NCBI GenBank assembly: GCA_965235115.1
Contig: OZ249441.1
Coordinates: forward strand, 1,612,001-1,676,000
DNA: 64,000 nt
Reading direction: 5' to 3'
DNA from: Laetmonice hystrix
Lineage: Eukaryota
Shown piece by piece: positions 13,401 to 61,742 of the stretch (the stretch's first letter is position 1; each line of letters begins with the position of its first letter). Both the position numbers and the translations under genes were made by a program. A model generated the notes under the pieces. That model saw nothing but the letters and a program-made list of their open reading frames with translations. It was not told where the DNA came from and did not search any database.

Positions 13401-14628
13401 CTATTGATACTGATTCATTAACCCATAGACCGACAGATACAACAAACCTATTGATACTGATTCATTAACCCATAGACCGACAGATACAACAAACCTATTG
13501 ATACTGATTCATTAACCCATAGACCGACAGATACAACAAACCTATTGATACTGATTCATTAACCCATAGACTGACAGATACAACAAACCTATTGATACTG
13601 ATTCATTAACCCATAGACCGACAGATACAACAAACCATAACGTGCTATTGATACTGATTCATTAACCCATAGACCGACAGATACAACAAACCATAACGTG
13701 CTATTGATACCGATTCATTAACCCATAGACCGACAGATACAACAAACCTATTGATACTGATTCATTAACCCATAGACCGACAGATACAACAAACCTATTG
13801 ATACTGATTCATTAACCCATAGACCGACAGATACAAACCATAACGTGCTATTGATACTGATTCATTAACCCATAGACCGACAGATACAACAAACCTATTG
13901 ATACTGATTCATTAACCCATAGACCGACAGATACAACAAACCTATTGATACTGATTCATTAACCCATAGACCGACAGATACAACAAACCTATTGATACTG
14001 ATTCATTAACCCATAGACCGACAGATACAACAAACCTATTGATACTGATTCATTAACCCATAGACCGACAGATACAACAAACCTATTGATACTGATTCAT
14101 TAACCCATAGACCGACAGATACAACAAACCTATTGATACTGATTCATTAACCCATAGACCGACAGATACAACAAACCTATTGATACTGATTCATTAACCC
14201 ATAGACCGACAGATACAACAAACCTATTGATACTGATTCATTAACCCATAGACCGACAGATACAACAAACCTATTGATACTGATTCATTAACCCATAGAC
14301 CGACAGATACAACAAACCTATTGATACTGATTCATTAACCCATAGATCGACAGATACAACAAACCATAACGTGCTATTGATACTGATTCATTAACCCATA
14401 GACCGACAGATACAACAAACCTATTGATACTGATTCATTAACCCATAGACCGACAGATACAAACCATAACGTTCTATTGATACTGATTCATTAACCCATA
14501 GATCGACAGATACAACAAACCTATTGATACTGATTCATTAACCCATAGACCGACAGATACAACAAACCTATTGATACTGATTCATTAACCCATAGACCGA
14601 CAGATACAACAAACCATAACGTGCTATT
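13401..14628. repeat. 47 bp minisatellite, about 25 copies with 54-57 bp variants
   Basis: ctattgatactgattcattaacccatagaccgacagatacaacaaac repeated; some units add cataacgtg. Confidence 0.97.
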
Positions 14629-20192: not shown

Positions 20193-23100
20193 CACAACCC
20201 CTATCACTGTACTACGATACTCTCACACCCAACACAGCACAACCCCGATCACTGTACTACGATACTCTCACACCCGACACAGCACAACCCCTATCACTGT
20301 ACTACGATACTCTCACACCCGACACAGCACAACCCCTATCACTGTACTACGATACTCTCACACCCAACACAGCACAACCCCTATCACTGTACGATACTCT
20401 CACACCCGACACAGCACAACCCCTATCACTGTACTACGATACTCTCACACCCGACACAGCACACTGTACTACGATACTCTCACACCCAACACAGCACAAC
20501 CCCTATCACTGTACTACGATACTCTCACACCCGACACAGCACAACCCCATCACTGTACTACGATACTCTCACACTCGACACAGCACAACCCCTATCACTG
20601 TACTACGATACTCTCACACCCGACACAGCACAACCCTATCACTGTACTACGATACTCTCACACCCGACACAGCACAACCCCTATCACTGTACTACGATAC
20701 TCTCACACCCGACACAGCACAACCCCTATCACTGTACTACGATACTCTCACACCCGACACAGCACAACCCCTATCACTGTACTACGATACTCTCACACCC
20801 AACACAGCACAACCCCCATCACTGTACTACGATACTCTCACACCCAACACAGCACAACCCCTATCACTGTACTACGATACTCTCACACCCGACACAGCAC
20901 AACCCCTATCACTGTACTACGATACTCTCACACCCGACACAGCACAACCCCTATCACTGTACTACGATACTCTCACACCCGACACAGCACAACCCCTATC
21001 ACTGTACTACGATACTCTCACACCCGACACAGCACAACCCCTATCACTGTACTACGATACTCTCACAGCACAACCCCTATCACTGTACTACGATACTCTC
21101 ACACCCAACACAGCACAACCCCTATCACTGTACTACGATACTCTCACACCCGACACAGCACAACCCCTATCACTGTACTACGATACTCTCACACCCGACA
21201 CAGCACAACCCCCATCAGTGTACTACGATACTCTCACACCCGACACAGCACAACCCCATCACTGTACTACGATACTCTCACACCCGACACAGCACAACCC
21301 CTATCACTGTACTACGATACTCTCACACTCGACACAGCACAACCCCTATCACTGTACTACGATACTCTCACACCCAACACAGCACAACCCCTATCACTGT
21401 ACTACGATACTCTCACACACAACACAGCACAACCCCTATCACTGTACTACGATACTCTCACACCCAACACAGCACAACCCCTATCACTGTACTACAATAC
21501 TCTCACACCCGACACAGCACAACCCCTATCACTGTACTACGATACTCTCACACCCGACACAGCACAACCCCGATCACTGTACTACGATACTCTCACACCC
21601 GACACAGCACAACCCCTATCACTGTACTACGATACTCTCACACCCAACACAGCACAACCCCTATCACTGTACTACGATACTCTCACACCCGACACAGCTC
21701 AACCCCTATCACTGTATTACGATACTCTCACACCCGACACAGCACAACCCCTATCACTGTACTACGATACTCTCACACCCGACACAGCACAACCCCTATC
21801 ACTGTACTACGATACTCTCACACCCAACACAGCACAACCCCTATCACTGTACTACGATACTCTCACACCCGACACAGCACAACCCCTATCACTGTACTAC
21901 GATACTCTCACACCCGACACAGCACAACCCCTATCACTGTACTACGATACTCTCACACCCGACACAGCACAACCCCTATCACTGTACTACGATACTCTCA
22001 CACCCAACACAGCACAACCCCTATCACTGTACTACGATACTCTCACACCCGACACAGCACAACCCCCATCACTGTACTACGATACTCTCACACCCAACAC
22101 AGCACAACCCCCATCACTGTACTACGATACTCTCACACCCAACACAGCACAACCCCTATCACTGTACTACGATACTCTCACACCCAACACAGCACAACCC
22201 CTATCACTGTACTACGATACTCTCACACCCAACACAGCACACTGTACTACGATACTCTCACACCCGACACAGCACAACCCCTATCACTGTACTACGATAC
22301 TCTCACACCCGACACAGCACAACCCCTATCACTGTACTACGATACTCTCACACCCGACACAGCACAACCCCTATCACTGTACTACGATACTCTCACACCC
22401 GACACAGCACAACCCCTATCACTGTACTACGATACTCTCACACCCAACACAGCACAACCCCTATCACTGTACTACGATACTCTCACACCCGACACAGCAC
22501 AACCCCCATCACTGTACTACGATACTCTCACACCCAACACAGCACAACCCCTATCACTGTACTACGATACTCTCACACCCAACACAGCACAACCCCTATC
22601 ACTGTACTACGATACTCTCACACCCAACACAGCACACTGTACTACGATACTCTCACACCCGACACAGCACAACCCCTATCACTGTACTACGATACTCTCA
22701 CACCCGACACAGCACAACCCCTATCACTGTACTACGATACTCTCACACCCGACACAGCACAACCCCTATCACTGTACTACGATACTCTCACACCCGACAC
22801 AGCACAACCCTATCACTGTACTACGATACTCTCACACCCGACACAGCACAACCCCTATCACTGTACTACGATACTCTCACACCCAACACAGCACAACCCC
22901 TATCACTGTACTACGATACTCTCACACCCGACACAGCACACTGTACTACGATACTCTCACACCCGACACAGCACAACCCCTATCACTGTACTACGATACT
23001 CTCACACCCGACACAGCACAACCCCTATCACTGTACTACGATACTCTCACACCCGACACAGCACAACCCCTATCACTGTACTACGATACTCTCACACCCA

Positions 23101-23290
23101 ACACAGCACAACCCCTATCACTGTACTACGATACTCTCACACCCGACACAGCACACTGTACTACGATACTCTCACACCCGACACAGCACAACCCCTATCA
23201 CTGTACTACGATACTCTCACACCCGACACAGCACAACCCCTATCACTGTACTACGATACTCTCACACCCGACACAGCACAACCCCCATCA
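20193..23290. repeat. 45 bp minisatellite of about 3.1 kb (about 70 copies)
   Basis: cactgtactacgatactctcacacccgacacagcacaacccctat; explains the 1123 aa ORF. Confidence 0.98.
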
Positions 23291-27467: not shown

Positions 27468-28618
27468 ACGTTTATGGGAATACTTAACTCATATCTGTTC
27501 TCTATAACATAACGTTTAGGGGAATACTTAACTCATATCTGTTCTCTATTACATAACGTTTAGGGGAATGCTTAACTCATATCTGTTCTCTATAACATAA
27601 CGTTTAGGGGAATACTTAACTCATATCTGTTCTCTACCGTATAACATAACGTTTATGGGAATACTTAACTCATATCTGTTCTCTATTACATAACGTTTAG
27701 GGGAATACTTAACTCATATCTGTTCTCTATAACATAACGTTTATGGGAATACTTAACTCATATCTGTTCTCTATTACATAACGTTTAGGGGAATACTTAA
27801 CTCATATCTGTTCTCTATAACATAACGTTTATGGGAATACTTAACTCATATCTGTTCTCTATAACATAACGTTTAGGGGAATACTTAACTCATATCTGTT
27901 CTCTATAACATAACGTTTAGGGGAATACATAACTCATATCTGTTCTCTATAACATAACGTTTATGGGAATACTTAACTCATATCTGTTCTCTATAACATA
28001 ACGTTTAGGGGAATACTTAACTCATATCTGTTCTCTATAACATAACGTTTTTGGGAATACTTAACTCATATCTCTTCTTTATAACATAACGTTTAGGGGA
28101 ATACTTAACTCATATCTGTTCTCTATAACATAACGTTTAGGGGAATACTTAACTCATATCTGTTCTCTATAACATAACGTTTATGGGAATACTTAACTCA
28201 TATCTGTTCTCTATAACATAACGTTTAGGGGAATACTTAACTCATATCTGTTCTCTTTAACATAACGTTTAGGGGAATACTTAACTCATATCTGTTCTCT
28301 ATAACATAACGTTTAGGGGAATACTTAACTCATATCTGTTCTCTATAACATAACGTTTTTGGGAATACTTAACTCATATCTGTTCTCTACCGTATAACAT
28401 AACGTTTATGGGAATACTTAACTCATATCTGTTCTCTATTACATAACGTTTAGAGGAATACTTAACTCATATCTGTTCTCTATAACATAACGTTTAGGGG
28501 AATACTTAACTCATATCTGTTCTCTATAACATAACGTTTAGGGGAATACTTAACTCATATCTGTTCTCTATAACATAACGTTTAGGGGAATACTTAACTC
28601 ATATCTCTTCTCTAAAAC
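27468..28618. repeat. 44 bp minisatellite, about 26 copies
   Basis: aacgttta(g/t)gggaatacttaactcatatctgttctctataacat. Confidence 0.97.
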
Positions 28619-28829
28619 ATCACTCCAAAGTCAAGGTGATCTATATAACGTCACTCCAAAGTCAAGGTGGATCACTATAACATCACTCCAAAGTCAAGGT
28701 GGATCTCTATAACATCACTCCAAAGTCAAGGTGATCTATATAACATCACTCCAAAGTCAAGGTGGATCTCTATAACATCACTCCAAAGTCAAGGTGGATC
28801 TCTATAACATCACTCCAAAGTCAAGGTGG
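28615..28829. repeat. Minisatellite of about 32 bp abutting the 44 bp array
   Basis: cactccaaagtcaaggtggatctctataacat, about 7 copies. Confidence 0.93.
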
Positions 28830-30037
28830 ATACTGGCATGTGACACCACGTTAGGAGCATAGAGAGTGTTTTCCCCAAGGTTTGTTTGAATGAAACCTGC
28901 CCTGGTTATCTATTTCACGAGTTATAAACCTTGGTATATTACCCAAGTAGTCTGGGGTCGGCAAAGTATTGCACGTCGAGTGGGGGATAATCCTTTGGGT
29001 TCATGTACAGCAGATCTCACTCTTTCTGCCCCATCTAACCAAAAATTATTGCTGTCACTAAAAATCTTTAAAATTTCTACTGTAAGGTGAAATACTGCAT
29101 TATTTCCCATAGAAATATCTTTTTAATAAAAGGTTGCTACTCAGTGTATCTTTCCATTTGGCAAATCTACTTGGTATATCAAATACAAAGCTTGATGGGC
29201 AGTGAGATTATACCAAGTGAAACATGTACTAAGGGATCCATTGACCCATCACGTCATCCTTTCTCTTCTATCTAGGCCAAAGGTCTTGCATCCCCCGCCA
29301 AGTTAACCTTAAATGATTTCTTCTCTTTCCGTCATTATCATTGGGGAATCCCTTGATGCCCTGGGGGCAACCACGCCGCGTGTTGGCCCCAGACCCATTC
29401 ATCACACGACTCCCATTGTCCCCCATAGAATATACAAACAGACTCCATCATCCAAACATTTTACACCAATCTCTGCCAGGTAGATATTAGATAACTGAAG
29501 ATTAAAGCAATGCCAAGGCCAATGTGGCGATAAAAATCACGGTGCTGAACGTGAAGCCTGCTTGTCAAGGAGGCTGAGCAGTGACGGCGGCGGCGGCGGC
29601 TCGCCAGTCACACAATCTCCACATGTTCATTATCACATGGCACCGGGGCCGGCCGAGCCGGAACTACTTTCTTGGGAGGGAATTCCCTCCCAGTCAGTCA
29701 GCTGGTGGTGTGTGTTGGTGTCATTCCCTGAGTGTATTGATTGCCATGTGCCGAGCTACACATTAGTAAGGGTGTGGGAGGGGGCGCTTCCCGGGTGTAA
29801 ACACAGCCCGCCTGCCAGTCACTCTACTCGGCCATCCCCCGCCAGCGGCCCACACAATGCTTACATCTGCCTGCCACTGCTACCTGCACCAATCACAGGT
29901 GGGCACCAGCCACTTTGTACAGGCTTCCCCAGCCCAGCCAACACCTGGTCACTGACCAGACAATAGGGCTACAGAAAAATTAGGCTGACAATAGGGTGTC
30001 ATCAGTGGTATCTCATCTGACGGCTTTCCTCTCCAAC

Positions 30038-32087
30038 ATCCTTACACCTGGCCATACCAGGCCACGGAAACCCTCACAGCATCTCCCCGACTAACCTGGC
30101 CAACCTCCACAGCATCCTTACACCTGGCCATACCAGGCCACGGAAACCCTCACAGCATCTCCCCGACTAACCTGGCCAACTTCCACAACATCCTTACACC
30201 TGGCTATACCAGGCCACGGAAACCCTCACAGCATCTCCCCGACTAACCTGGCCAACTTCCACAGCATCCTTACACCTGGCTATACCAGGCTGTAGACGGA
30301 AACCCTCACAGCATCTCCCCGACTAACCTGGCCAACTTCCACAGCATCCTTACACCTGGCTATACCAGGCCGGAGTACGGAAACCCTCACAGCATCTCCC
30401 CGACTAACCTGGCCAACTTCCACAGCATCCTTACACCTGGCCATACCAGGCCGTAGTACGGAAACCCTCACAGCATCTCCCCGACTAACCTGGCCAACTT
30501 CCACAGCATCCTTACACCTGGCTATACCAGGCCGTAGTACGGGAAACCCTCACAGCATCTCCCCGACAAACCTGGCCAACTTCCACAGCATCCTTACACC
30601 TGGCTATACCAGGCCGTAGTACGGGAAACCCTCACAGCATCTCCCCGACAAACCTGGCCAACTTCCACAGCATCCTTACACCTGGCTATACCAGGCCGTA
30701 GACGGAAACCCTCACAGCATCTCCCCGACTAACCTGGCCAACTTCCACAGCATCCTTACACCTGGCTATACCAGGCCGTAGACAGAAACCCTCACAGCAT
30801 CTCCCCGACTAACCTGGCCAACTTCCCCAACATCCTTACACCTGGCTATACCAGGCCGTAGACGGAAACCCTCACAGCATCTCCCCGACTAACCTGGCCA
30901 ACTTCCACAGCATCCTTACACCTGGCCATACCAGGCCGTAGACAGAAACCCTCACAGCATCTCCCCGACTAACCTGGCCAACTTCCACAGCATCCTTACA
31001 CCTGGCTATACCAGGCCGTAGTACGGAAACCCTCACAGCATCTCCCCGACTAACCTGGCCAACTTCCCCAACATCCTTACACCTGGCCATACCAGGCCGT
31101 AGACAGAAACCCTCACAGCATCTCCCCGACTAACCTGGCCAACTTCCCCAACATCCTTACACCTGGCCATACCAGGCTGTAGACGGAAACCCTCACAGCA
31201 TCTCCCCGACTAACCTGGCCAACTTCCACAACATCCTTACACCTGGCTATACCAGGCCGTAGACGGAAACCCTCACAGCATCTCCCCGACTAATCTGGCC
31301 AACTTCCACAGCATCCTTACACCTGGCTATACCAGGCCGTAGACGGAAACCCTCACAGCATCTCCCCGACTAACCTCGCCAACTTCCACAGCATCCTTAC
31401 ACCTGGCTATACCAGGCCGTAGACAGAAACCCTCACAGCATCTCCCCGACTAACCTGGCCAACTTCCACAGCATCCTTACACCTGGCTATACCAGGCCGT
31501 AGTACGGAAACCCTCACAGCATCTCCCCGACTAACCTCGCCAACTTCCACAGCATCCTTACAGGGGTGGAAATTAGGGAAAATTACCTACTAGCCAGCAG
31601 GGCTAGTTAAGTAGAAATTTAACTAGCCCTGCTGTAAATGAACTAGCCAGCAGGACGAGTTCAGGTGAAGGGTTACTCGCCCTCCACGTGACCACTGCCC
31701 AGCCATTCAACCCACAGAAATCTGTAAAGTTGAAGGTGCTACCTTGTGGCTTTAGAAGATCTGGAATTGGGCAACTGGGGAACTTAGAACCTACTGAACA
31801 TTATAAATTCTCTGCCCGGTAGTATCATGACGACTGCCATTGTAGGGGCAGGCGATTACAGGAAAAAATCACTCGCCCATTAATTTTAGACAAATCGCCA
31901 GCAGGGCGACCTGAATGGTCAGACAAGGTCGCCCAACAGAGGTTTAACTCGCCACGGGCGAGCGGGCGAGCGTTAATTTCCACCCCTGTCCTTACATCTG
32001 GCCATACCAGGCCGTAGACGGAAACCCTCACAGCATCTCCCCAGTTCGGAAACCCTCACAGCATCTCACCGACTAACCTGGCCAACT
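30038..32087. repeat. 76-83 bp minisatellite (about 20 copies) interrupted by a MITE
   Basis: atccttacacctggctataccaggccgtagacggaaaccctcacagcatctccccgactaacctggccaacttccacagc. Confidence 0.96.
31561..31988. mobile_element. Non-autonomous DNA transposon (MITE), 428 bp, 6 bp TSD
   Basis: TIR CAGGGGTGGAAATTA / TAATTTCCACCCCTG; TCCTTA on both flanks (31555-60, 31989-94). Confidence 0.9.
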
Positions 32088-48332: not shown

Positions 48333-48767
48333 ATGGAGTACGAACAACTTGTACGGGATTATATCGGTGTATCAGGGAGATTCCAATGGATGATATTCAC
48401 GATTGCTTCACTCGATGCGTTTTCTTACGCCTTCTATACGATCATGCCGGTTTTTATCGCCCATGCCCCGCCACATTGGTGCAGTACGGAGGCGGAGACG
48501 TTATCTCAGTTATCCAACTGCTCCCAGGACGAAAGGATGACGTTTGCTATCCCCCAGACATGTGACGGGAAAGTTTGTGAGTACAGCTCATGTAAGATGT
48601 TCGTGAGAAATTATTCAGCTCTATATGATATGGACGCCATGGGCCAGCCTGAGAACACGTCATGCCCGCTACCTCTGATGACGAATTCAACGTGGAACTT
48701 AACGGAAGTCACCTGTACAGAATGGTCGTACGGTGACTCCTTTTACCAGGACACCGCTGCAAAAGAG
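48333..48767 (+). CDS. SLC22 exon 1 (TM1 and large extracellular loop)
   Basis: MEYEQLVRDYIGVSGRFQW...TAAKE; donor is weak (gttcct) but gives the conserved E|WGLVC junction. Confidence 0.85.
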
Positions 48768-49249
48768 GTTCCTAAAATACACCTAACCTATGCATGATAT
48801 CTTTGACCAGAAAATATGGTTCTATCATTATAGAGCCAGGGTCTGTCGCTGTAGGCCTACAAAGATTATCTGAACGCTGAAATAGGCGCGTGAAAAATCT
48901 AATGTCATTATATAGTGTACCAAGAAAGAGACTATTTCTTACGGATTCTTCCAGTAACTTCCTGGAGATGCATCCATTTCAATCACTATCAACTATAGGA
49001 CCTACAATAAGTAGGCCTACTATACCCCTTTTCTATATCCTCAAACTTTTTAAATAGGCCTACACAATGTAGAGTACGCACTAATAACTCGGGTCTACAA
49101 TATAGGGCCTATATGAGAGTCCTCTCGATGGGGCATTCGACCAATTCAGCGCACAGTAAGGACAAATAAATTTGGTCTCAGAGAAATGTCTAAGTACATA
49201 TAGTTTCTGTAAAAAGTTATACCCTGTGCCTATATGTTCACGTATACAG

Positions 49250-49353
49250 TGGGGCCTGGTGTGTGACCGAGAGGCTGAAGCCATGACTATTGGTGGTATC
49301 TACATGCTGGGCCGACTGTTTGGTTCGTCGTTACTAGGACCACTTCCTGACAC
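49250..49353 (+). CDS. SLC22 exon 2 (WGLVCDR...GPLPD)
   Basis: tatacag / gtacgt, 104 nt, phase 0-2. Confidence 0.9.
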
Positions 49354-49813
49354 GTACGTTACAACACCCCCCAGCACCTTCACCACCTTCCACCCTAACC
49401 CGCAACACATGCTAAATGGGTTCGACCTTTACTAAAGTTACAGAAGGGTCCATTTATCAAGGTATCGGGCAGTCTATATATATCTTTGTTGGCCTAGACA
49501 AAATTGCATCTTTGATCTTTGTAACCCAGTTAAGAAATATCTTGTGGGGAACAGAAATATAGGCTTTATATGAATGTAGTTCCTCGAGCGTTGGCTCCTG
49601 AGAAAACCATCAGATCTAAAAGATCGCACTTCCTATTGTAACAATTTTTTTACATGCACCTAAAAATCTATGGGACAGCTTGGACTCTATAGGGTGGAGT
49701 TGCGCAGGGTATAGGCCTATACTTCAGCGAGTTTTTGCAATTTTTTGAATTTATAGGGGGAGCTTAGGCTGTAATCTGCACAACCAATGAAGGACACACC
49801 TTTTCTCTTGCAG

Positions 49814-49968
49814 CTTTGGTCGTCGGCCTGTCATGATCGGTACCACAGCCGTTGTCTTTGCCTGTGTAGTCTCCTGTGCCTTTATGACGAATTTTTACGC
49901 CTTTCTGGCTCTACGTTTCCTTCTAGCCCTGGCTGACATGTCCCGTTCGAGCACAGGATTTATAATTG
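49814..49968 (+). CDS. SLC22 exon 3 (FGRRP...RFLLAL...GFII)
   Basis: ctcttgcag / gtattt, 155 nt, phase 2-1. Confidence 0.9.
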
Positions 49969-50036
49969 GTATTTAAACATTCTGGATAATTTTGATAAGA
50001 TGAATGTATTCTTTAACAGCCACCTTATCGGCATAG

Positions 50037-50037
<1 letters not shown>

Positions 50038-50067
<30 letters not shown>

Positions 50068-50079
50068 CTTCTTCTTCTT
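50038..50079. repeat. (CTT)n microsatellite
   Basis: About 14 copies. Confidence 0.95.
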
Positions 50080-50173
50080 TTTTATAGCTTTTATATAAAA
50101 GCGTCATTTAATAATGTATTGTTGCAAAATATATAATAAATAACGTAAAATGACAACGTGCATACTTCCACAG

Positions 50174-50345
50174 GGATCGAGTTTTGTGGACAATTCAAGC
50201 GGGTCAAGTTCACGGCCTACTGGAACCTGTTCTGGGCGAGCGGATACTGCAGTTTCGCCGCAGTGGCCTATCTACTCCGACGTTGGCGTTACCTGCACCT
50301 TGTGTCCGTATTGCCCGAGATACCCTTCTTCCTGGCCTATCTCAT
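50174..50345 (+). CDS. SLC22 exon 4 (IEFCG...FFLAYL)
   Basis: ttccacag / gtgagt, 172 nt, phase 1-2. Confidence 0.9.
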
Positions 50346-50383
50346 GTGAGTCGCTCTTCATGAGTCGCTCTTCATATATAAGA

Positions 50384-50716
50384 TACGGAGCCCCTAAGGA
50401 GACACGAGTGTAAACAAAGTTATACATTATATCGTTTCGTCGAAATGATTTCGTGGGAACGAAATAACATATTTCGTTCCGTCGAAATCATTTTGAGGGA
50501 ACCAAATAATATATTTCGTTCCGTCGAAATCATTTTGAGGAAACGAAATAACATATTTCTTTGCCTCGAAATCATTTTGAGGGAACGAATTATGTTATTT
50601 CGTTCCCACGAAATCATTTCGAGTGAACGAAATATGTTATTTTCTTTCCTCAAATAATTTCGAGGCAACTAAATAACATAATTTTGCCCCACCTATGTCC
50701 CCTTAGGGGCTCCGTA
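50384..50716. mobile_element. MITE with 16 bp TIR (including TA) and internal degenerate palindromic repeats of about 42 bp
   Basis: TACGGAGCCCCTAAGG / CCTTAGGGGCTCCGTA; TA ends suggest a Tc1/mariner-type TSD (inference). Confidence 0.85.
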
Positions 50717-50718
50717 AT

Positions 50719-50935
50719 AGGCAGCGTGGATCCATTATTAAAATGCAATGCTGCATGCAGGACCATCAAGTTGTCAAGGTTCAAACCACGAGCACTGGAG
50801 GGTAAACAGGACCGACGGGACTCTATAGGCCTAGGGTCTCTATATCGTTTAGAGTTGACGAAATATATGAGGGTGATCATTCCAACAATAAGCCTACTGC
50901 ATGTCAAACTTGTGATGTATGCTGCACTATACATC
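50719..50935 (+). mobile_element. Possible decayed tRNA-derived SINE
   Basis: B-box-like GGTTCAAACC near 50778 with a GC-rich head; no full cloverleaf. Confidence 0.3.
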
Positions 50936-50978
50936 GTCCAAAAAAAGCCAGCTTACGAACGTCTCGTGTTTCTTCTAG

Positions 50979-51108
50979 TTTTCTCCCAGAATCACCACGT
51001 TGGTTACTTCTTAAAAATCGCGACAAGGAGGTTCATAAGGTCATCGAAAGTATGGCACGGTGTAACGGATCGAAACTTCCCGACGGCTGGAGTGTTGTTG
51101 ACACCCAG
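50979..51108 (+). CDS. SLC22 exon 5 (FLPESPRWLLLK...WSVVDTQ)
   Basis: tttcttctag / gtaagt, 130 nt, phase 2-0; PESPRW motif. Confidence 0.92.
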
Positions 51109-53075
51109 GTAAGTATGATCGTTACTGACTTCAGACTGAAAGTATGGCAAGGTGTAACGGATCGAAACTTCCCGACGGCTGGAGTGTTGTTGACACCCAG
51201 GTAAGTATGATCGTTACTGACTTCATACTGAAAGTATGGCAAGGTGTAACGGATCGAAACTTCCGGACTGCTGGAGTGTTGTTGACACCCAGGTAAGTAT
51301 GATCGTTACTGACTTCATACTGAAAGTATGGCAAGGTGTAACGGATCGAAACTTCCCGACGGCTGGAGTGTTGTTGACACCCAGGTAAGTATGATCGTTA
51401 CTGACTTCATACTGAAAGTATGGCAAGGTGTAACGGATCGAAACTTCCGGACTGCTGGAGTGTTGTTGACACCCAGGTAAGTATGATCGTTACTGACTTC
51501 ATACTGAAAGTATGGCACGATGTAACGGGTCGAAACTTCCCGACGGCTGGAGTGTTGTTGACACCCAGGTAAGTATGATCGTTACTGACTTCATACTGAA
51601 AGGATCGAAACTTCCGGACGACTGGAGTGTTGTTGACACCCAGGTAAGTATGATCGTTACTGACTTCATACTGAAAGTATGGCAAGGTGTAACGGGTCGA
51701 AACTTCCGGACTGCTGGAGTGTTGTTGACACTCAGGTAAGTATGATCGTTACTGACTTCATACTGAAAGTATGGCAAGGTGTAACGGATCGAAACTTCCG
51801 GACTGCTGGAGTGTTGTTGACACTCAGGTAAGTATGATCGTTACTGACTTCATACTGAAAGTATGGCAAGGTGTAACGGATCGAAACTTCCGGACTGCTG
51901 GAGTGTTGTTGACACCCAGGTAAGTATGATCGTTACTGACTTCATACTGAAAGTATGGCAAGGTGTAACGGATCGAAACTTCCGGACAGCTGGAGTGTTG
52001 TTGACACTCAGGTAAGTATGATCGTTACTGACTTCATACTGAAAGTATGGCAAGGTGTAACGGATCGAAACTTCCGGACTGCTGGAGTGTTGTTGACACT
52101 CAGGTAAGTATGATCGTTACTGACTTCATACTGAAAGTATGGCAAGGTGTAACGGATCGAAACTTCCGGACTGCTGGAGTGTTGTTGACACTCAGGTAAG
52201 TATGATCGTTACTGACTTCATACTGAAAGTATGGCAAGGTGTAACGGATCGAAACTTCCCGACGGCTGGAGTGTTGTTGACACCCAGGTAAGTATGATCG
52301 TTACTGACTTCATACTGAAAGGATCGAAACTTCCGGACGGCTGGAGTGTTGTTGACACTCAGGTAAGTATGATCGTTACTGACTTCATACTGAAAGGATC
52401 GAAACTTCCGGACGGCTGGAGTGTTGTTGACACTCAGGTAAGTATGATCGTTACTGACTTCATACTGAAAGGATCGAAACTTCCGGACGGCTGGAGTGTT
52501 GTTGACACTCAGGTAAGTATGATCGTTACTGACTTCATACTGAAAGTATGGCAAGGTGTAACGGATCGAAACTTCCCGACGGCTGGAGTGTTGTTGACAC
52601 CCAGGTAAGTATGATCGTTACTGACTTCATACTGAAAGGATCGAAACTTCCGGACGGCTGGAGTGTTGTTGACACTCAGGTAAGTATGATCGTTACTGAC
52701 TTCATACTGAAAGTATGGCAAGGTGTAACGGGTCGAAACTTCCCGACGGCTGGAGTGTTGTTGACACCCAGGTAAGTATGATCGTTACTGACTTCATACT
52801 GAAAGTATGGCAAGGTGTAACGGATCGAAACTTCCGGACAGCTGGAGTGTTGTTGACACCCAGGTAAGTATGATCGTTACTCACTTAATACTGAAAGTAT
52901 GGCAAGGTGTAACGGATCGAAACTTCCGGACAGCTGGAGTGTTGTTGACACCCAGGTAAGTATGATCGTTACTGACTTCATACTGAAAGTATGGCAAGGT
53001 GTAACGGATCGAAACTTCCGGACAGCTGGAGTGTTGTTGACACCCAGGTAGGTATCGTTGCTGCCTTCATACTTG
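51046..53075 (+). repeat. Tandem array (92 and 75 bp units) of the exon 5 3' end plus donor site, 23 donor copies
   Basis: gaaagtatggc..gtgttgttgacac(c/t)CAG|GTAAGTATgatcgttactgacttcatact; GT at 51109, 51201 ... 52956, 53048. Confidence 0.97.
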
Positions 53076-53193
53076 TTCGATTACCTCGATAAAAGAACTT
53101 TATGGCTTGAAAGGTGTCTCTTACCAAACCTTTACCATAACGCTTGTATAGAAAATTATCAAAATTATATCCTGACACCGTCTCTTTCAACAG

Positions 53194-53276
53194 AGTAACG
53201 AAAAGAGGGGGAGCTGCTTGGACCTTTTCAAGACACCACGTTTACGTTTGATAACCATCGTTCTTGCCTATATATT
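53194..53276 (+). CDS. SLC22 exon 6 (SNEKRGSCLDLFKTPRLRLITIVLAYI)
   Basis: ctttcaacag / gtaagt, 83 nt, phase 0-2; DLFxTPxLR motif. Confidence 0.9.
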
Positions 53277-53682
53277 GTAAGTACAGCCACATACCGCTAC
53301 TGAATCCCAATATACAATGTGTCTGCTTTCATTTTTGTTATTTCATATATGTAACGTAGTTGATAACATACTATGTAATAATCTTGACTGTGAACATATT
53401 ATTTTGAATGGCCAAAATAGTATTGGCTACTGTTGTGTACTGTTATTGTACTGTTGTGCCCATAGGCCTGCTATAGGCCTATGCTACCACACTTTCAGGC
53501 CCGAGTAGCTGTGCTATAGGTTATTTCCCCCATGGTAACTTCCCCACAACCTTTTTGGGCAGGGAGTTATGGGTTAAGGTCAGTGATAGGGATAGGATAA
53601 TGATATGTTTTTGAGAGGTGTATACCTGACTTCAAACCCCACGTGCGCTTATTATTCTATGTATGCAACAAACTTTTTCCAG

Positions 53683-53897
53683 CTTCGCCAACTCGTTTGT
53701 GTATTACGGATTTTCAATGAACACTTCTAACCTGGCTGGCGACCCGTTCCTCAACTGTTTCCTCAGTGGCCTGGTCGACATACCTGTCGCTGCTTTCCTC
53801 TATTTCTGCTACGACCGCTTCCCCCGGGTCCCACTCTTCGCCACACTGATGTTGGCGGCAGGAGTCGCCCAAATGTTATCGCTCACCGTCTCGACAG
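53683..53897 (+). CDS. SLC22 exon 7 (FANSFVYYG...LTVST)
   Basis: tttttccag / gtaggc, 215 nt, phase 2-1. Confidence 0.92.
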
Positions 53898-54124
53898 GTA
53901 GGCATTACAAGTACATGTACATGTAATCACTGTAGGGCATCGTCAGTGGTACATCGCCCGTGATAACTTAAACCCCGCGAAATTTGGTCGAAACTAAAGA
54001 ACCATAGCCTGACTTTATCTCTAACCCCGGTCCCTACACCTCCCAAAAACATGTCCCTATTCCATCCCTATCCATGACCTTAAGCCGAACCCCTGGCAAA
54101 ACGTTTTGTTGGGAAGTTACGTGC

Positions 54125-54225
54125 AAGTGGTTCTGGCTGGAGGGGGATTCGAACCCAGACGTGACAGACCCTGTTGGTCAAGGAACCAGAGCTTTAGACC
54201 ACAGCACTGAGCTTTGCCCACCACA
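54125..54225 (-). mobile_element. tRNA-derived SINE head
   Basis: Minus strand A-box-like TGGTCTAAAGC (54201-54191) and B-box GGTTCGAATCCC (54155-54144). Confidence 0.6.
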
Positions 54226-54234
54226 AGCCATCGT

Positions 54235-54570
54235 CAGGGCCGTGCCCAGAGATTGGTGCAGGGGGGGGGGGGGGGGGGGTTACTGCCAATACTGGTGCAG
54301 GGGAGGGGGGTTATTCAATTCAATTCAATTCAATGGACTTTATTGCGGACACATCTACATAGTATGATAATACATAGAGGTCCATAGAAACTGGGAACTA
54401 AAGACTAAAGACTAAAGACTAGAACATCAGCTAACCAGAGCCAATGTGTAGCAAGTTACAGTGGACAGACCCAAGTGTTAGGACCTAAAAAAAACTAAAA
54501 ATAAAAAAATCTTTGGCACCCAGGGGGGGTTACAGACATCCACCCCCCCCCCCCCCTTGGCACGGCCCTG
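54235..54570. mobile_element. MITE, 336 bp, 5 bp TSD, carrying a retroposon 3' end with (ATTCA)n tail
   Basis: CAGGGCCGTGCC / GGCACGGCCCTG; ATCGT on both flanks; (ATTCA)4 at 54313-32 next to TTTATT. Confidence 0.85.
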
Positions 54571-54804
54571 ATCGTGGATTGCAGTATTTATGGCAAACAC
54601 CGTCCAACGACAGACCGACCAGCCTCACCATATACCTCTCAAGTACTGCACAGTGTATCGAAACCAGGTGTGAAAGGAATGGAGATCTGTCGGATCTAGA
54701 TTCCCTGGTTATGCAGGTCCTGGGTAATCACCTTTGTGGTATGAGATATTATGATAGAATTCTGCAGTTCGTCGTCACATATACTCAGTAGGCCTATAGG
54801 GTCT

Positions 54805-55850
54805 GACGACAGGTAATCACTGTAGGGCGTCACGACAGGTATAATCACTGTAGGGCGTCACGACAGGTACTCACTGTAGGGCGTCACGACAGGTACTCAC
54901 TGTAGGGCGTCACGACAGGTACTCACTGTAGGGCGTCACGACAGGTACTCACTGTAGGGCGTCACGACAGGTAATCACTGTAGGGCGTCACCACAGGTAC
55001 TCACTGTAGGGCGTCACCACAGGTAATCACTGTAGGGCGTCACCACAGGTAATCACTGTAGGGTGTCACCACAGGTACTCACTGTAGGGCGTCACCACAG
55101 GTACTCACTGTAGGGCGTCACCACAGGTACTCACTGTAGGGCGTCGCGACAGGTAATCACTGTAGGGCGTCACCACAGGTACTCACTGTAGGGCGTCACG
55201 ACAGGTACTCACTGTAGGGCGTCACCACAGGTAATCACTGTAGGGCGTCACGACAGGTATAATCACTGTAGGGCGTCACGACAGGTACTCACTGTAGGGC
55301 GTCATCACAGGTACTCACTGTAGGGCGTCACGACAGGTAATCACTGTAGGGCGTCACGACAGGTACTCACTGTAGGGCGTCACCACAGGTAATCACTGTA
55401 GGGCGTCACGACAGGTATAATCACTGTAGGGCGTCACCACAGGTACTCACTGTAGGGCGTCACCACAGGTAATCACTGTAGGGCGTCACCACAGGTAATC
55501 ACTGTAGGGCGTCACCACAGGTAATCACTGTAGGGCGTCACCACAGGAACTCACTGTAGGGCGTCACCACAGGTAATCACTGTAGGGCGTCATCACAGGT
55601 AATCACTGTAGGGCGTCATCACAGGTAATCACTGTAGGGCGTCATCACAGGTAATCACTGTAGGGCGTCATCACAGGTAATCACTGTAGGGCGTCACCAC
55701 AGGTACTCACTGTTGGGCGTCACCACATGTAGGCCTACTCACTGTAGGGCATCACCACAGGTAATCACTGTAGGGCGTCATCACAGGTAATCACTGTAGG
55801 GCGTCACCACAGGTAATCACTGTAGGGCGTCACGACAGGTAATCACTGTA
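54805..55850 (+). repeat. 26 bp minisatellite, about 40 copies, related to the exon 7 donor junction
   Basis: cgtca(c/t)(g/c)aCAG|GTA(a/c)tcactgtaggg. Confidence 0.96.
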
Positions 55851-56415
55851 CGGCCTATGTCGGAGATCAAACATCCCATCCCATACGGACACGTTTCGGA
55901 GACAGAATTTAAAAAAAAAAGCTCCATGTTTGTGTCCGTGACAGGCCCATCACTAGCCTGGTGCCCTGTGCCTACCATACGCATCCCCTATGTTAGGCCG
56001 GGTGATGGCTAACAGAAAGCTGCGAAACGGAAGTGATTAATCTTCAAGCACTTCCGCTTCCGTTCTGTTGGTCAGCGTTAACAGAGTGACCGACTTCTGC
56101 TTGGAGCGTGGCCGGGAGTGGCCAACATGCCACTGCGTATGCAGACCGTAGCAGGTGTGGGGACTGATGACGCTATGTTTAGGCCTACATCCAGAAAAGC
56201 GAGGACATTTAACACTTGTATTTTAAAGGGATTGATGAAAATATCTGTATCTTGTTGGAGAAATACGGAGGGTACGGAACCACCTCGTTTGCGTCCATGT
56301 TTTCGATGGGCCAATCACAACGCTCGCTTCGATTGGCCTTCACCAGGCTCAATATAGGCCTACGTAGTCAATATAGAGCTGGGGACCAGGCCAGCCCATC
56401 ACCGGAATATATGTC

Positions 56416-56539
56416 CAGGGCCGTAGCCTGGCCCAAATGCGTGGGGGGGGGGGGGGGGTTAAAAAAACACAAAAAAAACTGGAAATCCCAGGGGGCAGCT
56501 GCCCCCCTGCCCCCCCCCCCCCCGCAGGCTACGGCCCTG
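56416..56539. mobile_element. Short MITE (124 bp)
   Basis: 15 bp perfect TIR CAGGGCCGTAGCCTG / CAGGCTACGGCCCTG with internal poly-G/poly-C; TSD not clean. Confidence 0.8.
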
Positions 56540-56650
56540 TGTACTAATATATATATAGTCCTAAACTCAATAAACAGCAATAAACATCAATGTCAGACCT
56601 TGTGTCGGCCTATTTATGTTGTTTTTTGATAAAAGACAACTTGTTTGCAG

Positions 56651-56835
56651 ACGAGCTGTGGTGGCTAACGGTGTCAATGTCCATGGTAGGCAAACTGTTC
56701 ATCGCGGCCACATTCCTCATCACGTGGCTCGTGGTAACGGAAGTCTTTCCCACGGCTGTGCGGGGGGTCGGGTTAGGCCTGACAAACAGTGCCGCCCGAC
56801 TGGCTGCCTTTGTGGCTGCCTATGTGGGCATGTTG
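56651..56835 (+). CDS. SLC22 exon 8 (DELWW...GKLF...EVFPTAVRG...AARLAAF...GML)
   Basis: ttgtttgcag / gtaagc, 185 nt, phase 1-0. Confidence 0.93.
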
Positions 56836-57075
56836 GTAAGCTCGTGAACTCGTTCACCGGTCATTCTGCAATAGGTTAATTTGTTAAATTATTCTTACTT
56901 TTGAATTATGATTGCATGAATTTGTATTCAAGAAGGTTGCCTTAATATAAACGGCGTTATTTTTACATAAATAGCCGAAAGTAATTTGGGTTGCCATATG
57001 AGCTGGCCATGTGTAGGCAGACCATCAGAAACCATACAAGGCAAACGCTCTAACCTATTACGTTGTTCTTTACAG

Positions 57076-57233
57076 GGACGTATCCACCCGTCACTGCCCG
57101 TGATAGTGTTTGCCAGTTCAGCCCTCCTGGCTGGTTCTTTGGTTCTCATTCTTCCCGAAACTCGCGGAGTTGTCCTGCCTCAGACTGTCGACGAAGGCGA
57201 ACGATTTCTGGCCGCACATATGTTCGATATCTG
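57076..57233 (+). CDS. SLC22 exon 9 (GRIHPSLP...LPETRG...MFDI); alternatively reads on to a stop at 57246
   Basis: ttctttacag acceptor; LPET motif; weak donor gtgcgc. Confidence 0.85.
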
Positions 57234-57486
57234 GTGCGCTAAATGATTTCTCTCGTCTACATTTGTGTATATATGGTTATTTGGAGAAACGCAGGAACCC
57301 AATAACAACCTAAAAGGCAAATCGTTACCAGTGTTTTCTTTGTTTTAACGATTTATGATAGAATACCGACATATTGATTATTTATTATCATATTATATTT
57401 TGTAGAATCTTTTTATCACTTACGGCATTTTTCTCTGAGGTATTTTACCAATATCTACATATATATCGGCTCTCTTTACATTGCAG

Positions 57487-60666: not shown

Positions 60667-61570
60667 TCCTTACCCACAGCCTACATTGGAAACCTACTTA
60701 CCCACAGCCACTGACTGCCATGACATTGGAGACCTACTTACCCACAGCCACTGACTGCCATGACATTGGAGACCTACTTACCCACAGCCACTGACTGCCA
60801 TGACATTGGAGACCTACTTACCCACAGCCACTGACTGCCATTACATTGGAGACCTACTTACCCACAGCCTACATTGGAAACCTACTTACCCACAGCCACT
60901 GACTGCCATGACATTGGAGACCTACTTACCCATAGCCACTGACTGCCATGACATTGGAGACCTACTTACCCACAGCCACTGACTGCCATGACATTGGAGA
61001 CCTACTTACCCACATTGGAGACCTACTTACCCACAGCCACTGACTGCCATGACATTGGAGACCTACTTACCCACAGCCACTGACTGCCATGACATTGGAG
61101 ACCTACTTACCCACAGCCACTGACTGCCATAACATTTGAGACCTACTTACCCACAGCCTACATTGGAGACCTACTTACCCACAGCCACTGACTGCCATGA
61201 CATTGGAGACCTACTTACCCACAGCCACTGACTGCCATGACATTGGAGACCTACTTACCCACAGCCACTGACTGCCATGACATTGGAGACCTACTTACCC
61301 GCAGCCACTGACTGCCATGACATTGGAGACCTACTTACCTGCAGCCACTGACTGCCATGACATTGGAGACCTACTTACCCACAGCCACTGACTGCCATGA
61401 CATTGGAGACCTACTTACCCACAGCCACTGACTGCCACGACATTGGAGACCTACTTACCCACAGCCACTGACTGCCACGACATTGGAGACCTACTTACCC
61501 GCAGCCACTGACTGCCATGACATTGGAGACCTACTTACCCACAGCCACTGACTGCCATGACATTGGAGAC
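60667..61570 (-). repeat. 40 bp tandem array of the MTCH2 exon 3' end plus donor site, 24 donor copies
   Basis: Minus strand gtctccaatgtcatggcagtcagtggctgTGG|GTAAGTAG; 28 and 21 bp variants. Confidence 0.97.
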
Positions 61571-61742
61571 CAGAGAGAAGGGATATGTAATCTGGGTGAC
61601 CATCATTGTACACAGCGCGTTGGTGTAGGATTTAATCCCCTTCGGTTCTGTCTTGGGCAGCACATACTGGTTTAGGGCATGGACCACAAGGTTAACCAAC
61701 CAAATGGTCAGAGCCTCTCCAACTAGCCGTGGGACTATGCCA
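61539..61742 (-). CDS. MTCH2: MTCH2 exon (GIVPRLVGE...YPFSLVSNVMAVSGC)
   Basis: ttccatgatag / gtaagt, 204 nt, phase 2-2. Confidence 0.92.

What the first reader, a model, noticed from the sequence alone, without database searches (positions are those of the whole stretch)
51046..53075. Array of 23 SLC22 exon 5 donor junctions, 22 with the perfect U1 complement CAG|GTAAGTAT
The 11 nt site is fully complementary to the U1 snRNA 5' end. Using donor 2 adds 92 nt (frameshift), and later donors include TAA. The last copy (53048, GTAGGT) is diverged and runs into unique intron. Units of 92 and 75 bp alternate and carry point variants, which argues against a simple assembly artefact.
Basis: partly seen in the sequence, partly recalled or inferred. 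Interest (0 to 1): 0.8.

Follow-up and report, generated by a model that had tools for sequence, protein, structure and literature searches.

The report
Repeated splice-donor minisatellite in SLC22 gene
A 2-kb tandem repeat has copied the end of exon 5 plus its splice donor 23 times into the following intron of an organic-ion transporter gene; the array is real, but it belongs to a kind already described (amphioxus "mirages", the human F7 intron-7 repeat) and is most likely a tolerated by-product of a genome full of minisatellites.

Summary
Window 51046-53073 is a tandem array of 23 units. Each unit is the last 63 nt (46 nt in five units) of SLC22-like exon 5 plus the first 29 nt of intron 5. 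Twenty-two units carry CAG|GTAAGTAT, the exact 11-nt complement of this genome's own U1 5' end. The last unit has GTAGGT.

Only donor 1 gives the intact 549-aa reading frame. That exon boundary is shared with single-donor paralogues, so the array is a derived addition. The repeat occurs nowhere else in the 627-Mb genome. Read k-mer depth from the same sample supports the copy number.

Which donor is used could not be shown. The one RNA-like run has spliced contigs for exons 4/5 and 7/8, but none across the exon 5/6 junction.

The kind is known: minisatellites whose first unit spans an exon-intron boundary occur in human F7, IFI6, CBS, LMNB2 and PDGF, and as "mirages" in amphioxus. They are usually spliced at the first donor.

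This genome is minisatellite-rich. A second donor array (MTCH2-like gene) lies 8 kb away. Seven or eight of 18 sampled AGGTAAGT arrays elsewhere start at coding exon ends. First readers of this scan noted many more in this genome. Donor motifs are not clearly enriched over a reversed control. Verdict: new member of a known kind.

The parts
48333..57246 (+). SLC22-like transporter gene, 9 coding exons, 549 aa. Exons: 48333-48767, 49250-49353, 49814-49968, 50174-50345, 50979-51108, 53194-53276, 53683-53897, 56651-56835, 57076-57246.
   Evidence: Intact ORF with AG/GT borders at every junction. The exon-7 peptide matches OCTN2, OCT3 and OCT1 structures colinearly, E 1e-7 to 2e-3. Weak MFS_1 and Sugar_tr Pfam hits on exons 3, 5 and 8. 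GxxxDxxGRR-like and ESPRW motifs are visible in the translation.
50979..51108 (+). Exon 5 (130 nt, ends in phase 0), encoding ..FLPESPRWLLLKNRDKEVHKVIESMARCNGSKLPDGWSVVDTQ.
   Evidence: Paralogues end this exon at the same codon, 31 aa after ESPRWLLLK, each with a single donor. An RNA-like contig of run X4 begins exactly at 50979.
51106..51116 (+). Donor 1, CAG|GTAAGTAT. The only donor that gives the full-length ORF.
   Evidence: Perfect 11-nt complement of the genome's U1 5' end ATACTTACCTG.
51046..53073 (+). Junction-spanning minisatellite of 23 units. Each unit is the last 63 nt (or 46 nt) of exon 5 plus the first 29 nt of intron 5.
   Evidence: TRF score 3167. Unit table and unit-type string ABCBCDEFGCHGGBIIIBIJKLM. 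Internal 92-nt units are on average 97.3% identical. Unique in the genome. k-mer depth supports the copy number.
51198..52963 (+). 21 intronic pseudo-donors, all CAG|GTAAGTAT (CAG starts at 51198, 51290, 51382, 51474, 51566, 51641, 51733, 51825, 51917, 52009, 52101, 52193, 52285, 52360, 52435, 52510, 52602, 52677, 52769, 52861, 52953).
   Evidence: Each use would give a premature stop. Predicted RNA accessibility does not differ from donor 1.
51202..51204 (+). TAA. First in-frame stop for intron read-through and for any donor from the third onward.
51598..51672 (+). First 75-nt unit (17-nt deletion of TATGGCAAGGTGTAACG). The other 75-nt units lie at 52317-52541 (three units) and 52634-52708.
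53045..53073 (+). Last donor, CAG|GTAGGTAT, with a diverged intron part (GTAGGTAT-CGTTGCTGCCTTCATACT). This is the array edge and possibly the ancestral intron start.
   Evidence: The exon part of unit 23 is identical to units 21 and 22, while its intron part differs by 3 substitutions and a 3-nt gap.
53074..53193 (+). Unique tail of intron 5, ending in the acceptor ..tctctttcaacag.
53194..53276 (+). Exon 6, the acceptor shared by all 23 donors.

Best explanation
This is a locus-specific minisatellite of the 'mirage' type.

Origin (inferred). A 92-bp segment straddling the exon 5 / intron 5 boundary of an SLC22-like gene was duplicated in tandem. The duplication probably arose by slippage at a short homology: exon ..GTCATC|GAAAG versus intron ..TTCATACT|. 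Unequal exchange then expanded it to 23 units. The interior has been homogenised, a 75-bp deletion variant has spread locally, and the 3' edge unit was left diverged.

Effect on splicing (inferred from frame and precedent, not shown by junction reads). The duplicated part lies downstream of the authentic donor. The splicing machinery takes the first donor, either by exon definition or by 5'-to-3' choice among identical sites, as shown for human F7 intron 7. The whole array is then removed as part of a 2.1-kb intron, so the other 22 perfect donors are silent or nearly silent pseudo-sites. Any leak to donor 2 or later gives a premature stop and presumably decay of the transcript.

Context. The array is a tolerated by-product of this genome's very high rate of minisatellite formation, not a device.
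For: Shown:
- Array anatomy and its exon/intron composition.
- It is unique in the genome.
- Only donor 1 keeps the 549-aa frame.
- Paralogous SLC22 genes end the exon at the same codon with one donor, so the array is derived.
- The gene is intact. In the RNA-like run X4, contigs break exactly at the exon-5 acceptor (50979) and span the exon 7/8 junction.
- Read k-mer depth of repeat contigs is 11.0x and 10.4x single-copy depth, against 12.4 and 10.8 expected from the assembly.
- The window holds at least 11 minisatellites in 64 kb. One is a second donor-junction array in the neighbouring MTCH2-like gene.
- Seven or eight of 18 AGGTAAGT-periodic arrays sampled on other chromosomes start at the 3' end of a recognisable coding exon: CUB, NYN, TRP_2, PKS_DH_N, Ras, Peptidase_M17, IMD.
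- Periodic donor motifs are not clearly commoner than the reversed control: 1126 vs 1122, 1579 vs 955, 277 vs 280.

Precedent:
- F7, LMNB2 and PDGF use only the first donor; IFI6 and CBS also use the next two (PMC1557585).
- Amphioxus mirages do not disturb splicing and show edge units excluded from homogenisation (PMC3087553, PMC3902484).
Against: - No read or contig crosses the exon 5/exon 6 junction, so donor usage is not shown. X4 has no contig on the last 67 nt of exon 5, on exon 6 or on exon 7. The tool itself warns that such holes prove nothing.
- In the F7 experiments, pseudo-sites that match the consensus perfectly did shift splicing toward themselves (PMC1557585). All 22 sites here are perfect.
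- In-vitro work on duplicated strong donors has sometimes favoured the intron-proximal site (my own knowledge, not checked here).
- All DNA and RNA runs come from one sample, probably the assembled individual.
- The pattern counts are weighted by copy number and are noisy, so a 1.5-2-fold preference for junctions cannot be excluded.
Confidence: 0.75

Rival explanations
1. Donor competition matters. A substantial share of transcripts uses donor 2 or later, or is stalled by 22 extra perfect U1 sites, and is lost to nonsense-mediated decay. Array length would then set the gene's output, as an expression VNTR or a partly disabled gene.
For: All pseudo-sites are consensus-perfect and as accessible as donor 1. 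Perfect pseudo-sites shifted splicing in F7 constructs, and IFI6 and CBS use the first two pseudo-sites (PMC1557585). Every alternative donor gives a premature stop. X4 coverage of the gene is low, about 10x, and patchy.
Against: The ORF and all 16 splice sites are intact. Spliced contigs exist for other junctions. No X4 contig lies on the array, although its k-mers would be amplified about 11-fold if the array were kept in RNA; this is weak evidence because holes occur. The same structure recurs in conserved genes such as FASN-like, Rab and LAP-like genes, and mirages are reported harmless (PMC3087553, PMC3902484).
Confidence: 0.12
2. Splice junctions are preferred seeding sites for minisatellites in this genome, through a junction-directed mutational process. 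On this reading the array reflects a mechanism, not random seeding followed by tolerance.
For: Two clear and one probable donor-derived arrays lie in one 64-kb window. Seven or eight of 18 sampled arrays are exon-anchored. The period 68-98 pattern is 1.65-fold over control. Many first-reader notes in this genome describe donor and acceptor arrays; these are leads only.
Against: Two of three motif counts equal the reversed control. My back-of-envelope estimate is an inference: with about one array per 6 kb, units of about 50 bp and about one donor per 3 kb, random seeding alone predicts that roughly 1-2% of arrays span a donor, and that about 35-50% of AGGTAAGT-bearing arrays are junction-derived. 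That matches the sample. Most arrays in the window are not junction-derived. The window was picked because of these arrays.
Confidence: 0.1
3. Recursive-splicing ladder. Each internal ..ACACCCAG|GTAAGT serves as a zero-length ratchet site (acceptor immediately followed by a regenerated donor), so the array is removed stepwise and always yields the correct mRNA.
For: Every unit junction has YAG immediately followed by GTAAGT. The 20 nt upstream are 55% pyrimidine, within the range of this gene's true acceptors, 45-75%. A CTGAC branch-point-like motif lies in each unit.
Against: No RNA evidence. Known ratchet sites serve very long introns (own knowledge), whereas this intron is 2.1 kb. The motif follows automatically from an exon that ends in CAG. 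The MTCH2-like array (TGG|GTAAGT) and most sampled arrays have the same architecture without needing it.
Confidence: 0.03
4. Assembly artefact: a short duplication inflated by the assembler.
For: Tandem arrays are error-prone in assemblies. All reads available come from one sample.
Against: Repeat contigs in two raw-data runs have 10.4-11.0 times single-copy k-mer depth, against 10.8-12.4 expected from the assembled array. There are 13 distinct unit variants in an ordered pattern.
Confidence: 0.02

Closest known systems
'Mirage' minisatellites of amphioxus (Adh3, globins BflGb6/9, troponin C, PGBD5; PMC3087553, PMC3902484, citing Canestro et al. 2002)
   Same: Tandem duplications whose units span an exon-intron boundary and so reiterate a real splice site. 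Units are 10-160 bp. The interior is homogenised and the edge unit diverged. They occur at several genes in one genome and are reported not to disturb mRNA splicing.
   Different: This one has more copies (23) than the globin examples (3-6), and every copy is an 11-nt perfect U1 complement. The organism here is coded and I could not place it. It has at least 30 large contigs, the largest 73.8 Mb, which does not look like a 19-chromosome Branchiostoma (own knowledge). Length polymorphism and correct splicing were not shown here.
Human F7 intron 7 37-bp VNTR, with IFI6 (6-16), CBS intron 13, LMNB2 and PDGF intron 4 minisatellites (PMC1557585)
   Same: The first monomer spans the exon-intron boundary, and the authentic donor is followed by identical pseudo-donors: 4-8 in F7, 25 in IFI6, 15-20 repeats in CBS, 10-15 x 100 bp in LMNB2, 16-18 x 81 bp in PDGF. 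Only the most upstream donor, or the first few, is used.
   Different: The F7 donor is weak (UGG/gugggu) and only 4 nt of exon are repeated. Here 63 nt of coding exon are repeated and the donor has the maximal consensus. That is the one condition under which F7 pseudo-sites began to compete.
Recursive (ratchet) splice sites, AG|GTAAGT
   Same: Juxtaposed acceptor-like YAG and consensus donor at every unit junction.
   Different: Ratchet sites are single conserved sites in very long introns. Here the motif is a by-product of copying an exon that ends in CAG, and there is no evidence of use.
Intron gain by tandem duplication of an AGGT-containing exon segment (Rogers model; PMC3265369, PMC3087553)
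   Same: A tandem duplication that carries splice signals inside a gene.
   Different: No new intron or exon is created here. The copies lie inside an existing intron.

Membership tests
Junction-spanning ('mirage') minisatellite | Head-to-tail tandem array of a 10-200 bp unit | tested here: met
   23 units of 92 or 75 bp, TRF score 3167.
Junction-spanning ('mirage') minisatellite | The first unit contains an authentic exon-intron boundary of the host gene | tested here: met
   Unit 1 is the last 63 nt of coding exon 5 plus the donor. The frame is continuous into exon 6. The same exon end is found in paralogues. SLC22 homology is supported.
Junction-spanning ('mirage') minisatellite | The splice-site sequence is reiterated in the adjoining intron | tested here: met
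   22 identical CAG|GTAAGTAT plus one CAG|GTAGGTAT.
Junction-spanning ('mirage') minisatellite | Locus-specific origin, not a dispersed repeat or transposon | tested here: met
   A 184-nt query matches only C6:1663046-1665073 in the own genome.
Junction-spanning ('mirage') minisatellite | Normal mRNA is made from the authentic (outermost) site | tested here: inconclusive
   X4 contigs show exon 4/5 and 7/8 splicing but none crosses the exon 5/6 junction. Only donor 1 keeps the ORF.
Junction-spanning ('mirage') minisatellite | Length polymorphism or instability (VNTR behaviour) | not testable with these tools
   Only one sample is available. k-mer depth is 0.73-0.96 of the diploid expectation, depending on the baseline used. 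This is compatible with similar or somewhat different allele lengths.
Junction-spanning ('mirage') minisatellite | Concerted evolution inside the array, with the edge unit excluded | tested here: met
   Internal 92-nt units average 97.3% identity, with runs of identical neighbours. The intron part of unit 23 is diverged.
SLC22 organic ion transporter family (host gene) | MFS transporter with a long first extracellular loop and sequence homology to OCT/OCTN/OAT proteins | tested here: met
   The exon-7 peptide hits OCTN2 (1.1e-7), OCT3 and OCT1 at colinear positions. MFS_1 and Sugar_tr hits on exons 3, 5 and 8. The model is 549 aa and exon 1 encodes a Cys-rich loop. The whole protein was not searched as one piece.
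Perfect U1 snRNA complement | The site pairs with all 11 nt of the species' own U1 5' end | tested here: met
   42 U1 genes are over the Rfam cut-off. The four read begin ATACTTACCTG, the reverse complement of CAGGTAAGTAT.
Recursive splice site | Acceptor and regenerated donor used in successive steps; typically in a long intron | tested here: inconclusive
   The motif and pyrimidine content are compatible. The intron is only 2.1 kb, and no RNA intermediates could be examined.

The most novel reading that the evidence does not exclude
In this genome, splice junctions may be preferred birthplaces of minisatellites. The resulting ladders of consensus-perfect donors (here 22) may also not be silent: they could bind U1 and tune the host gene's output through unproductive splicing, stalled spliceosomes or protection from premature polyadenylation. 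Array length would then be a heritable expression dial acting at hundreds of genes.
Probability: 0.08. Interest if true: 0.65.

Novelty: new member of a known kind. Interest (0 to 1): 0.3.

Why it matters
As a single locus it is ordinary: one more minisatellite whose first unit spans an exon-intron boundary.

Its value is as material. It offers 22 downstream donors that are identical, maximally strong and equally accessible, competing with the authentic donor for one acceptor. That is the extreme case of the question asked with F7 constructs, namely how the spliceosome picks one among identical 5' splice sites.

This genome appears to hold many such natural constructs, at donors and, by other readers' notes, at acceptors. 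RNA-seq or long-read cDNA from this species, crossed with a genome-wide list of junction-spanning arrays, would test the 'first donor wins' rule on very many natural cases at once. It would also show whether perfect U1 complementarity changes the rule.

A practical point: such arrays will mislead gene predictors and short-read splice mappers, because junction reads fit 22 places.

Tried and rejected
- RNA evidence for donor choice. Two run searches (one search was busy) found only four runs of one sample, none on record as RNA. The single read-laying run showed that X4 behaves like RNA but has no contig on the last 67 nt of exon 5, on the array, or on exons 6-7. Donor usage is therefore unresolved. 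The X4 contig stops at 51041 with one unmatched terminal letter; this is unexplained and probably a coverage or variant break.
- RNA structure hiding the pseudo-donors. Mean unpaired probability is 0.26 for donor 1 and 0.23-0.46 for the others, so there is no distinction.
- Selection on the donor within copies. Seven of 63 exon-part columns vary, against 2 of 29 intron-part columns. This is not informative.
- Genome-wide enrichment of periodic donor motifs. Ratios to the reversed control are 1.00, 1.65 and 0.99. They are noisy, being weighted by copy number, and one dispersed 20-bp CAGGTAAGTGGGG.. satellite inflates the counts.
- Other arrays in the upstream minus-strand gene (4253, 13401, 18368, 20193, 27468, 28609, 30037). 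No exon junction sits at their edges.
- Taxon and orthologue. Atlas look-alikes were uninformative. The best library relatives of exon 1 are unnamed ENA proteins at 62% and 51% identity, and the named ones are myriapod MFS proteins at 36-41%. Their contigs could not be fetched because the sample file is too large. No cross-species comparison of the array was possible.
- Canestro et al. 2002 (PMC117041) is not held in the library. It is cited only through PMC3087553.
- Pfam on single exons gives only sub-threshold MFS hits. The whole spliced protein was not submitted because it has no reference and should not be typed.

Full report
**1. What is in the sequence**

Window 51046-53073 is a tandem array (Tandem Repeats Finder score 3167). 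The string CAGGTA[AG]GTAT occurs 23 times in the window, all inside the array. Twenty-two copies are CAGGTAAGTAT; the last, at 53045, is CAGGTAGGTAT. Spacings are 92 nt seventeen times and 75 nt five times. Laid out unit by unit, each unit has two parts:
- an exon part, GAAAGTATGGCA..GACACCCAG (63 nt, or 46 nt after a 17-nt deletion in units 7, 15-17 and 19);
- the first 29 nt of the intron, GTAAGTATGATCGTTACTGACTTCATACT.

Everything else in the description is right.

There are 13 distinct unit variants, in the order ABCBCDEFGCHGGBIIIBIJKLM. Internal 92-nt units average 97.3% identity.

**2. The host gene**

On the + strand, nine coding exons with AG/GT borders give an uninterrupted 549-aa frame. 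The exons are 48333-48767, 49250-49353, 49814-49968, 50174-50345, 50979-51108, 53194-53276, 53683-53897, 56651-56835 and 57076-57246.

The exon-7 peptide matches solved OCTN2, OCT3 and OCT1 structures at colinear positions, with E from 1e-7 to 2e-3. Exons 3, 5 and 8 give sub-threshold MFS_1 and Sugar_tr hits. The translation shows the GxxxDxxGRR-like and ESPRW motifs. "SLC22 exon 5" is therefore a fair label.

Only donor 1 (51108|51109) keeps the frame. Donor 2 adds 92 nt and stops 55 nt into exon 6. All later donors read into the TAA at 51202.

The genome has some 35 paralogous exon-5 matches, the nearest 59% identical. In the four paralogues inspected, the exon ends at the same codon, 31 residues after ESPRWLLLK, and is followed by a single donor and unrelated intron. 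Donor 1 is therefore the ancestral boundary and the array is a derived addition.

**3. Is it real, and is the U1 claim right?**

A two-unit query matches only this locus in the 627-Mb, 35-contig genome. It is not a dispersed repeat.

Four public runs of one sample hold the region. In the one read-laying run, repeat contigs have a k-mer depth of 675 in X1 and 737 in X3. Single-copy depth is about 60 and 71, giving ratios of 11.0 and 10.4. The assembled array predicts mean 31-mer multiplicities of 12.4 and 10.8 for those contigs. The raw data therefore carry roughly the assembled copy number, averaged over both haplotypes. This is the same sample, so it excludes assembler inflation but gives no independent individual.

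Rfam U1 finds 42 genes over the cut-off. The four I read start ATACTTACCTG. CAGGTAAGTAT is thus a perfect 11-nt complement in this species.

**4. Which donor is used?**

This is not resolved. Run X4 (58 Mb of contigs) behaves as RNA:
- A 222-nt contig matches 50979-51041 and leaves the genome exactly at the exon-5 acceptor.
- A 200-nt contig covers exon 8 and continues 17 nt beyond its acceptor, as expected for the end of exon 7.

The gene is therefore transcribed and spliced. However, X4 has nothing on the last 67 nt of exon 5, on the array, or on exons 6 and 7. The tool warns that holes prove nothing.

Predicted accessibility of the 11-mer is the same for donor 1 (0.26) as for the others (0.23-0.46). 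The case for donor 1 rests on three things: the frame, the conserved boundary, and precedent.

**5. How it probably arose**

The unit border reads ..CTTCATACT|GAAAG.. inside the array. The left flank is ..GGTCATC|GAAAG.. (exon) and the right flank is ..CTTCATACT|TGTTCG.. (intron). The short similarity TCAT(A)C(T) before both breakpoints fits slippage or template switching for the first duplication; this is an inference.

Three features are the usual marks of unequal exchange with homogenisation of the interior:
- runs of identical neighbours (units 12-13, 15-17);
- local spread of the 75-nt variant;
- a last unit whose exon part equals units 21-22 while its intron part is diverged (3 substitutions and a 3-nt gap).

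**6. Context in this genome**

The window holds at least 11 minisatellites.
- One, on the minus strand at 60674-61571, repeats the last 32 nt of an exon of an MTCH2-like carrier gene (..TYPFSLVSNVMAVSGCG|) plus GTAAGTAG. It gives 24 donors, mostly 40 nt apart.
- The 26-bp array at 54809-55854 has the unit GCGTCACGACAG|GTAATCACTGTAGG. This resembles the exon-7 junction CCGTCTCGACAG|GTAGG plus 53925-53947. A tRNA-like SINE now separates the array from that junction.
- The remaining arrays show no junction at their edges.

Elsewhere, I sampled 18 arrays found with a periodic AGGTAAGT pattern. Seven start at the 3' end of an ORF with a Pfam match: CUB 1.4e-6, NYN 7e-4, TRP_2 4e-4, PKS_DH_N 7e-8, Ras 1e-3, Peptidase_M17 3e-4 and IMD 1.7e-7. 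One more starts at a signal-peptide-like first exon.

First-stage notes of this scan describe many donor and acceptor arrays in this genome. I treat these as leads.

Against a special mechanism, periodic AGGTAAGT or CAGGTAAGT is no commoner than the reversed motif in two of three counts: 1126 vs 1122, 1579 vs 955, 277 vs 280. A rough estimate, which is my inference, assumes about one array per 6 kb, units of about 50 bp and one donor per about 3 kb. Random seeding then predicts that 1-2% of arrays span a donor, and that about 35-50% of AGGTAAGT-bearing arrays are junction-derived. That is what the sample shows.

**7. Comparison with what is known**

Borensztajn et al. (PMC1557585) list human genes with minisatellites whose first monomer spans an exon-intron boundary:
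- F7 intron 7: 37 bp, 5-9 repeats.
- IFI6: 25 pseudo-sites.
- CBS intron 13: 15-20 repeats.
- LMNB2: 100 bp x 10-15.
- PDGF intron 4: 81 bp x 16-18.

For F7 they show that the pseudo-sites are functional, yet only the most upstream site is chosen. Only pseudo-sites raised to a perfect consensus began to compete.

In amphioxus the same structures were named "mirages" (Adh3, globins, troponin C, PGBD5). They occur at both 5' and 3' boundaries, have homogenised interiors and diverged edges, and have no reported effect on mRNA (PMC3087553, PMC3902484). The authors suspected a general phenomenon in that lineage and called the mechanism unclear.

The present array meets every structural criterion of this kind. 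Splicing outcome and length polymorphism could not be tested.

I could not identify the organism. Names are coded. The best exon-1 relatives are unnamed at 62% and 51% identity, and the named ones are myriapod proteins at 36-41%.

**8. Verdict**

The array is real and accurately described. Mechanistically it is best read as a tolerated junction-spanning minisatellite whose 22 extra donors lie in the intron (confidence 0.75).

It is a new member of a known kind. Two things make it notable: the donors are consensus-perfect, and such arrays are frequent in this genome. The species would therefore be a good natural system for studying 5' splice-site choice.

Noticed in passing
window 60674-61571 (minus strand): A second donor-junction minisatellite. 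The last 32 nt of an exon of an MTCH2-like mitochondrial-carrier gene (..TYPFSLVSNVMAVSGCG|) plus GTAAGTAG are repeated, giving 24 donors mostly 40 nt apart (with 28- and 21-nt variants). The first donor's last exon base is at 61539.
   Followed up: partly
window 54809-55854 and 53885-53947: A 26-bp array of about 40 copies in intron 7. Its unit, GCGTCACGACAG|GTAATCACTGTAGG, resembles the exon-7 donor junction plus the sequence 30-50 nt into the intron. It is separated from that junction by about 850 bp that include a tRNA-like SINE with G-runs (about 53950-54800).
   Followed up: partly
window 51046-53047 (exon parts of the units): Among the copies, 5 of 8 distinct base changes are synonymous in the exon-5 reading frame (binomial P about 0.013 against 21% synonymous sites). 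The three non-synonymous changes all hit one Gly codon (GGC to TGC, AGC or GAC). This could mean the variants passed through the functional first copy by unequal exchange, or it could be chance.
   Followed up: partly
window 1-64000: Very high minisatellite load: at least 11 arrays with periods of 26-159 bp and up to 70 copies. Examples are 20193-23290 (45 bp x 70), 13401-14615, 27468-28620, 30037-31562 and 4253-5032. Most lie in introns of a Q-rich minus-strand gene and show no junction origin at their edges.
   Followed up: partly
G000 C1:250437-250782, C1:43974881-43975207, C1:46703657-46704005, C5:3567258-3567446 and others: A dispersed 20-bp satellite, CAGGTAAGTGGGGGATAGGA, occurs at many loci. 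It carries a consensus donor but is not exon-anchored in the two related copies inspected (L030, L031).
   Followed up: no
L021, L022, L017, L029, L033, L035, L036 (own genome, C1-C7): Further exon-end-plus-donor arrays in CUB-, NYN-, TRP-, FASN-like (PKS_DH_N), Rab-like (Ras), leucyl-aminopeptidase-like (Peptidase_M17) and IMD-domain genes, with units of 32-88 bp.
   Followed up: partly
window 51041-51042, run X4: The RNA-like contig that starts at the exon-5 acceptor ends at 51041 with one extra letter that does not match the genome, 67 nt before donor 1 and 4 nt before the repeat begins. The cause is unknown: a variant, a coverage break or a graph tip.
   Followed up: no
window 56706, 56718, 56733 (exon 8) and 50975: Contigs of the DNA runs and of X4 share three base differences within 28 nt of exon 8 relative to the assembly. 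This suggests a second, fairly divergent haplotype that is expressed.
   Followed up: no
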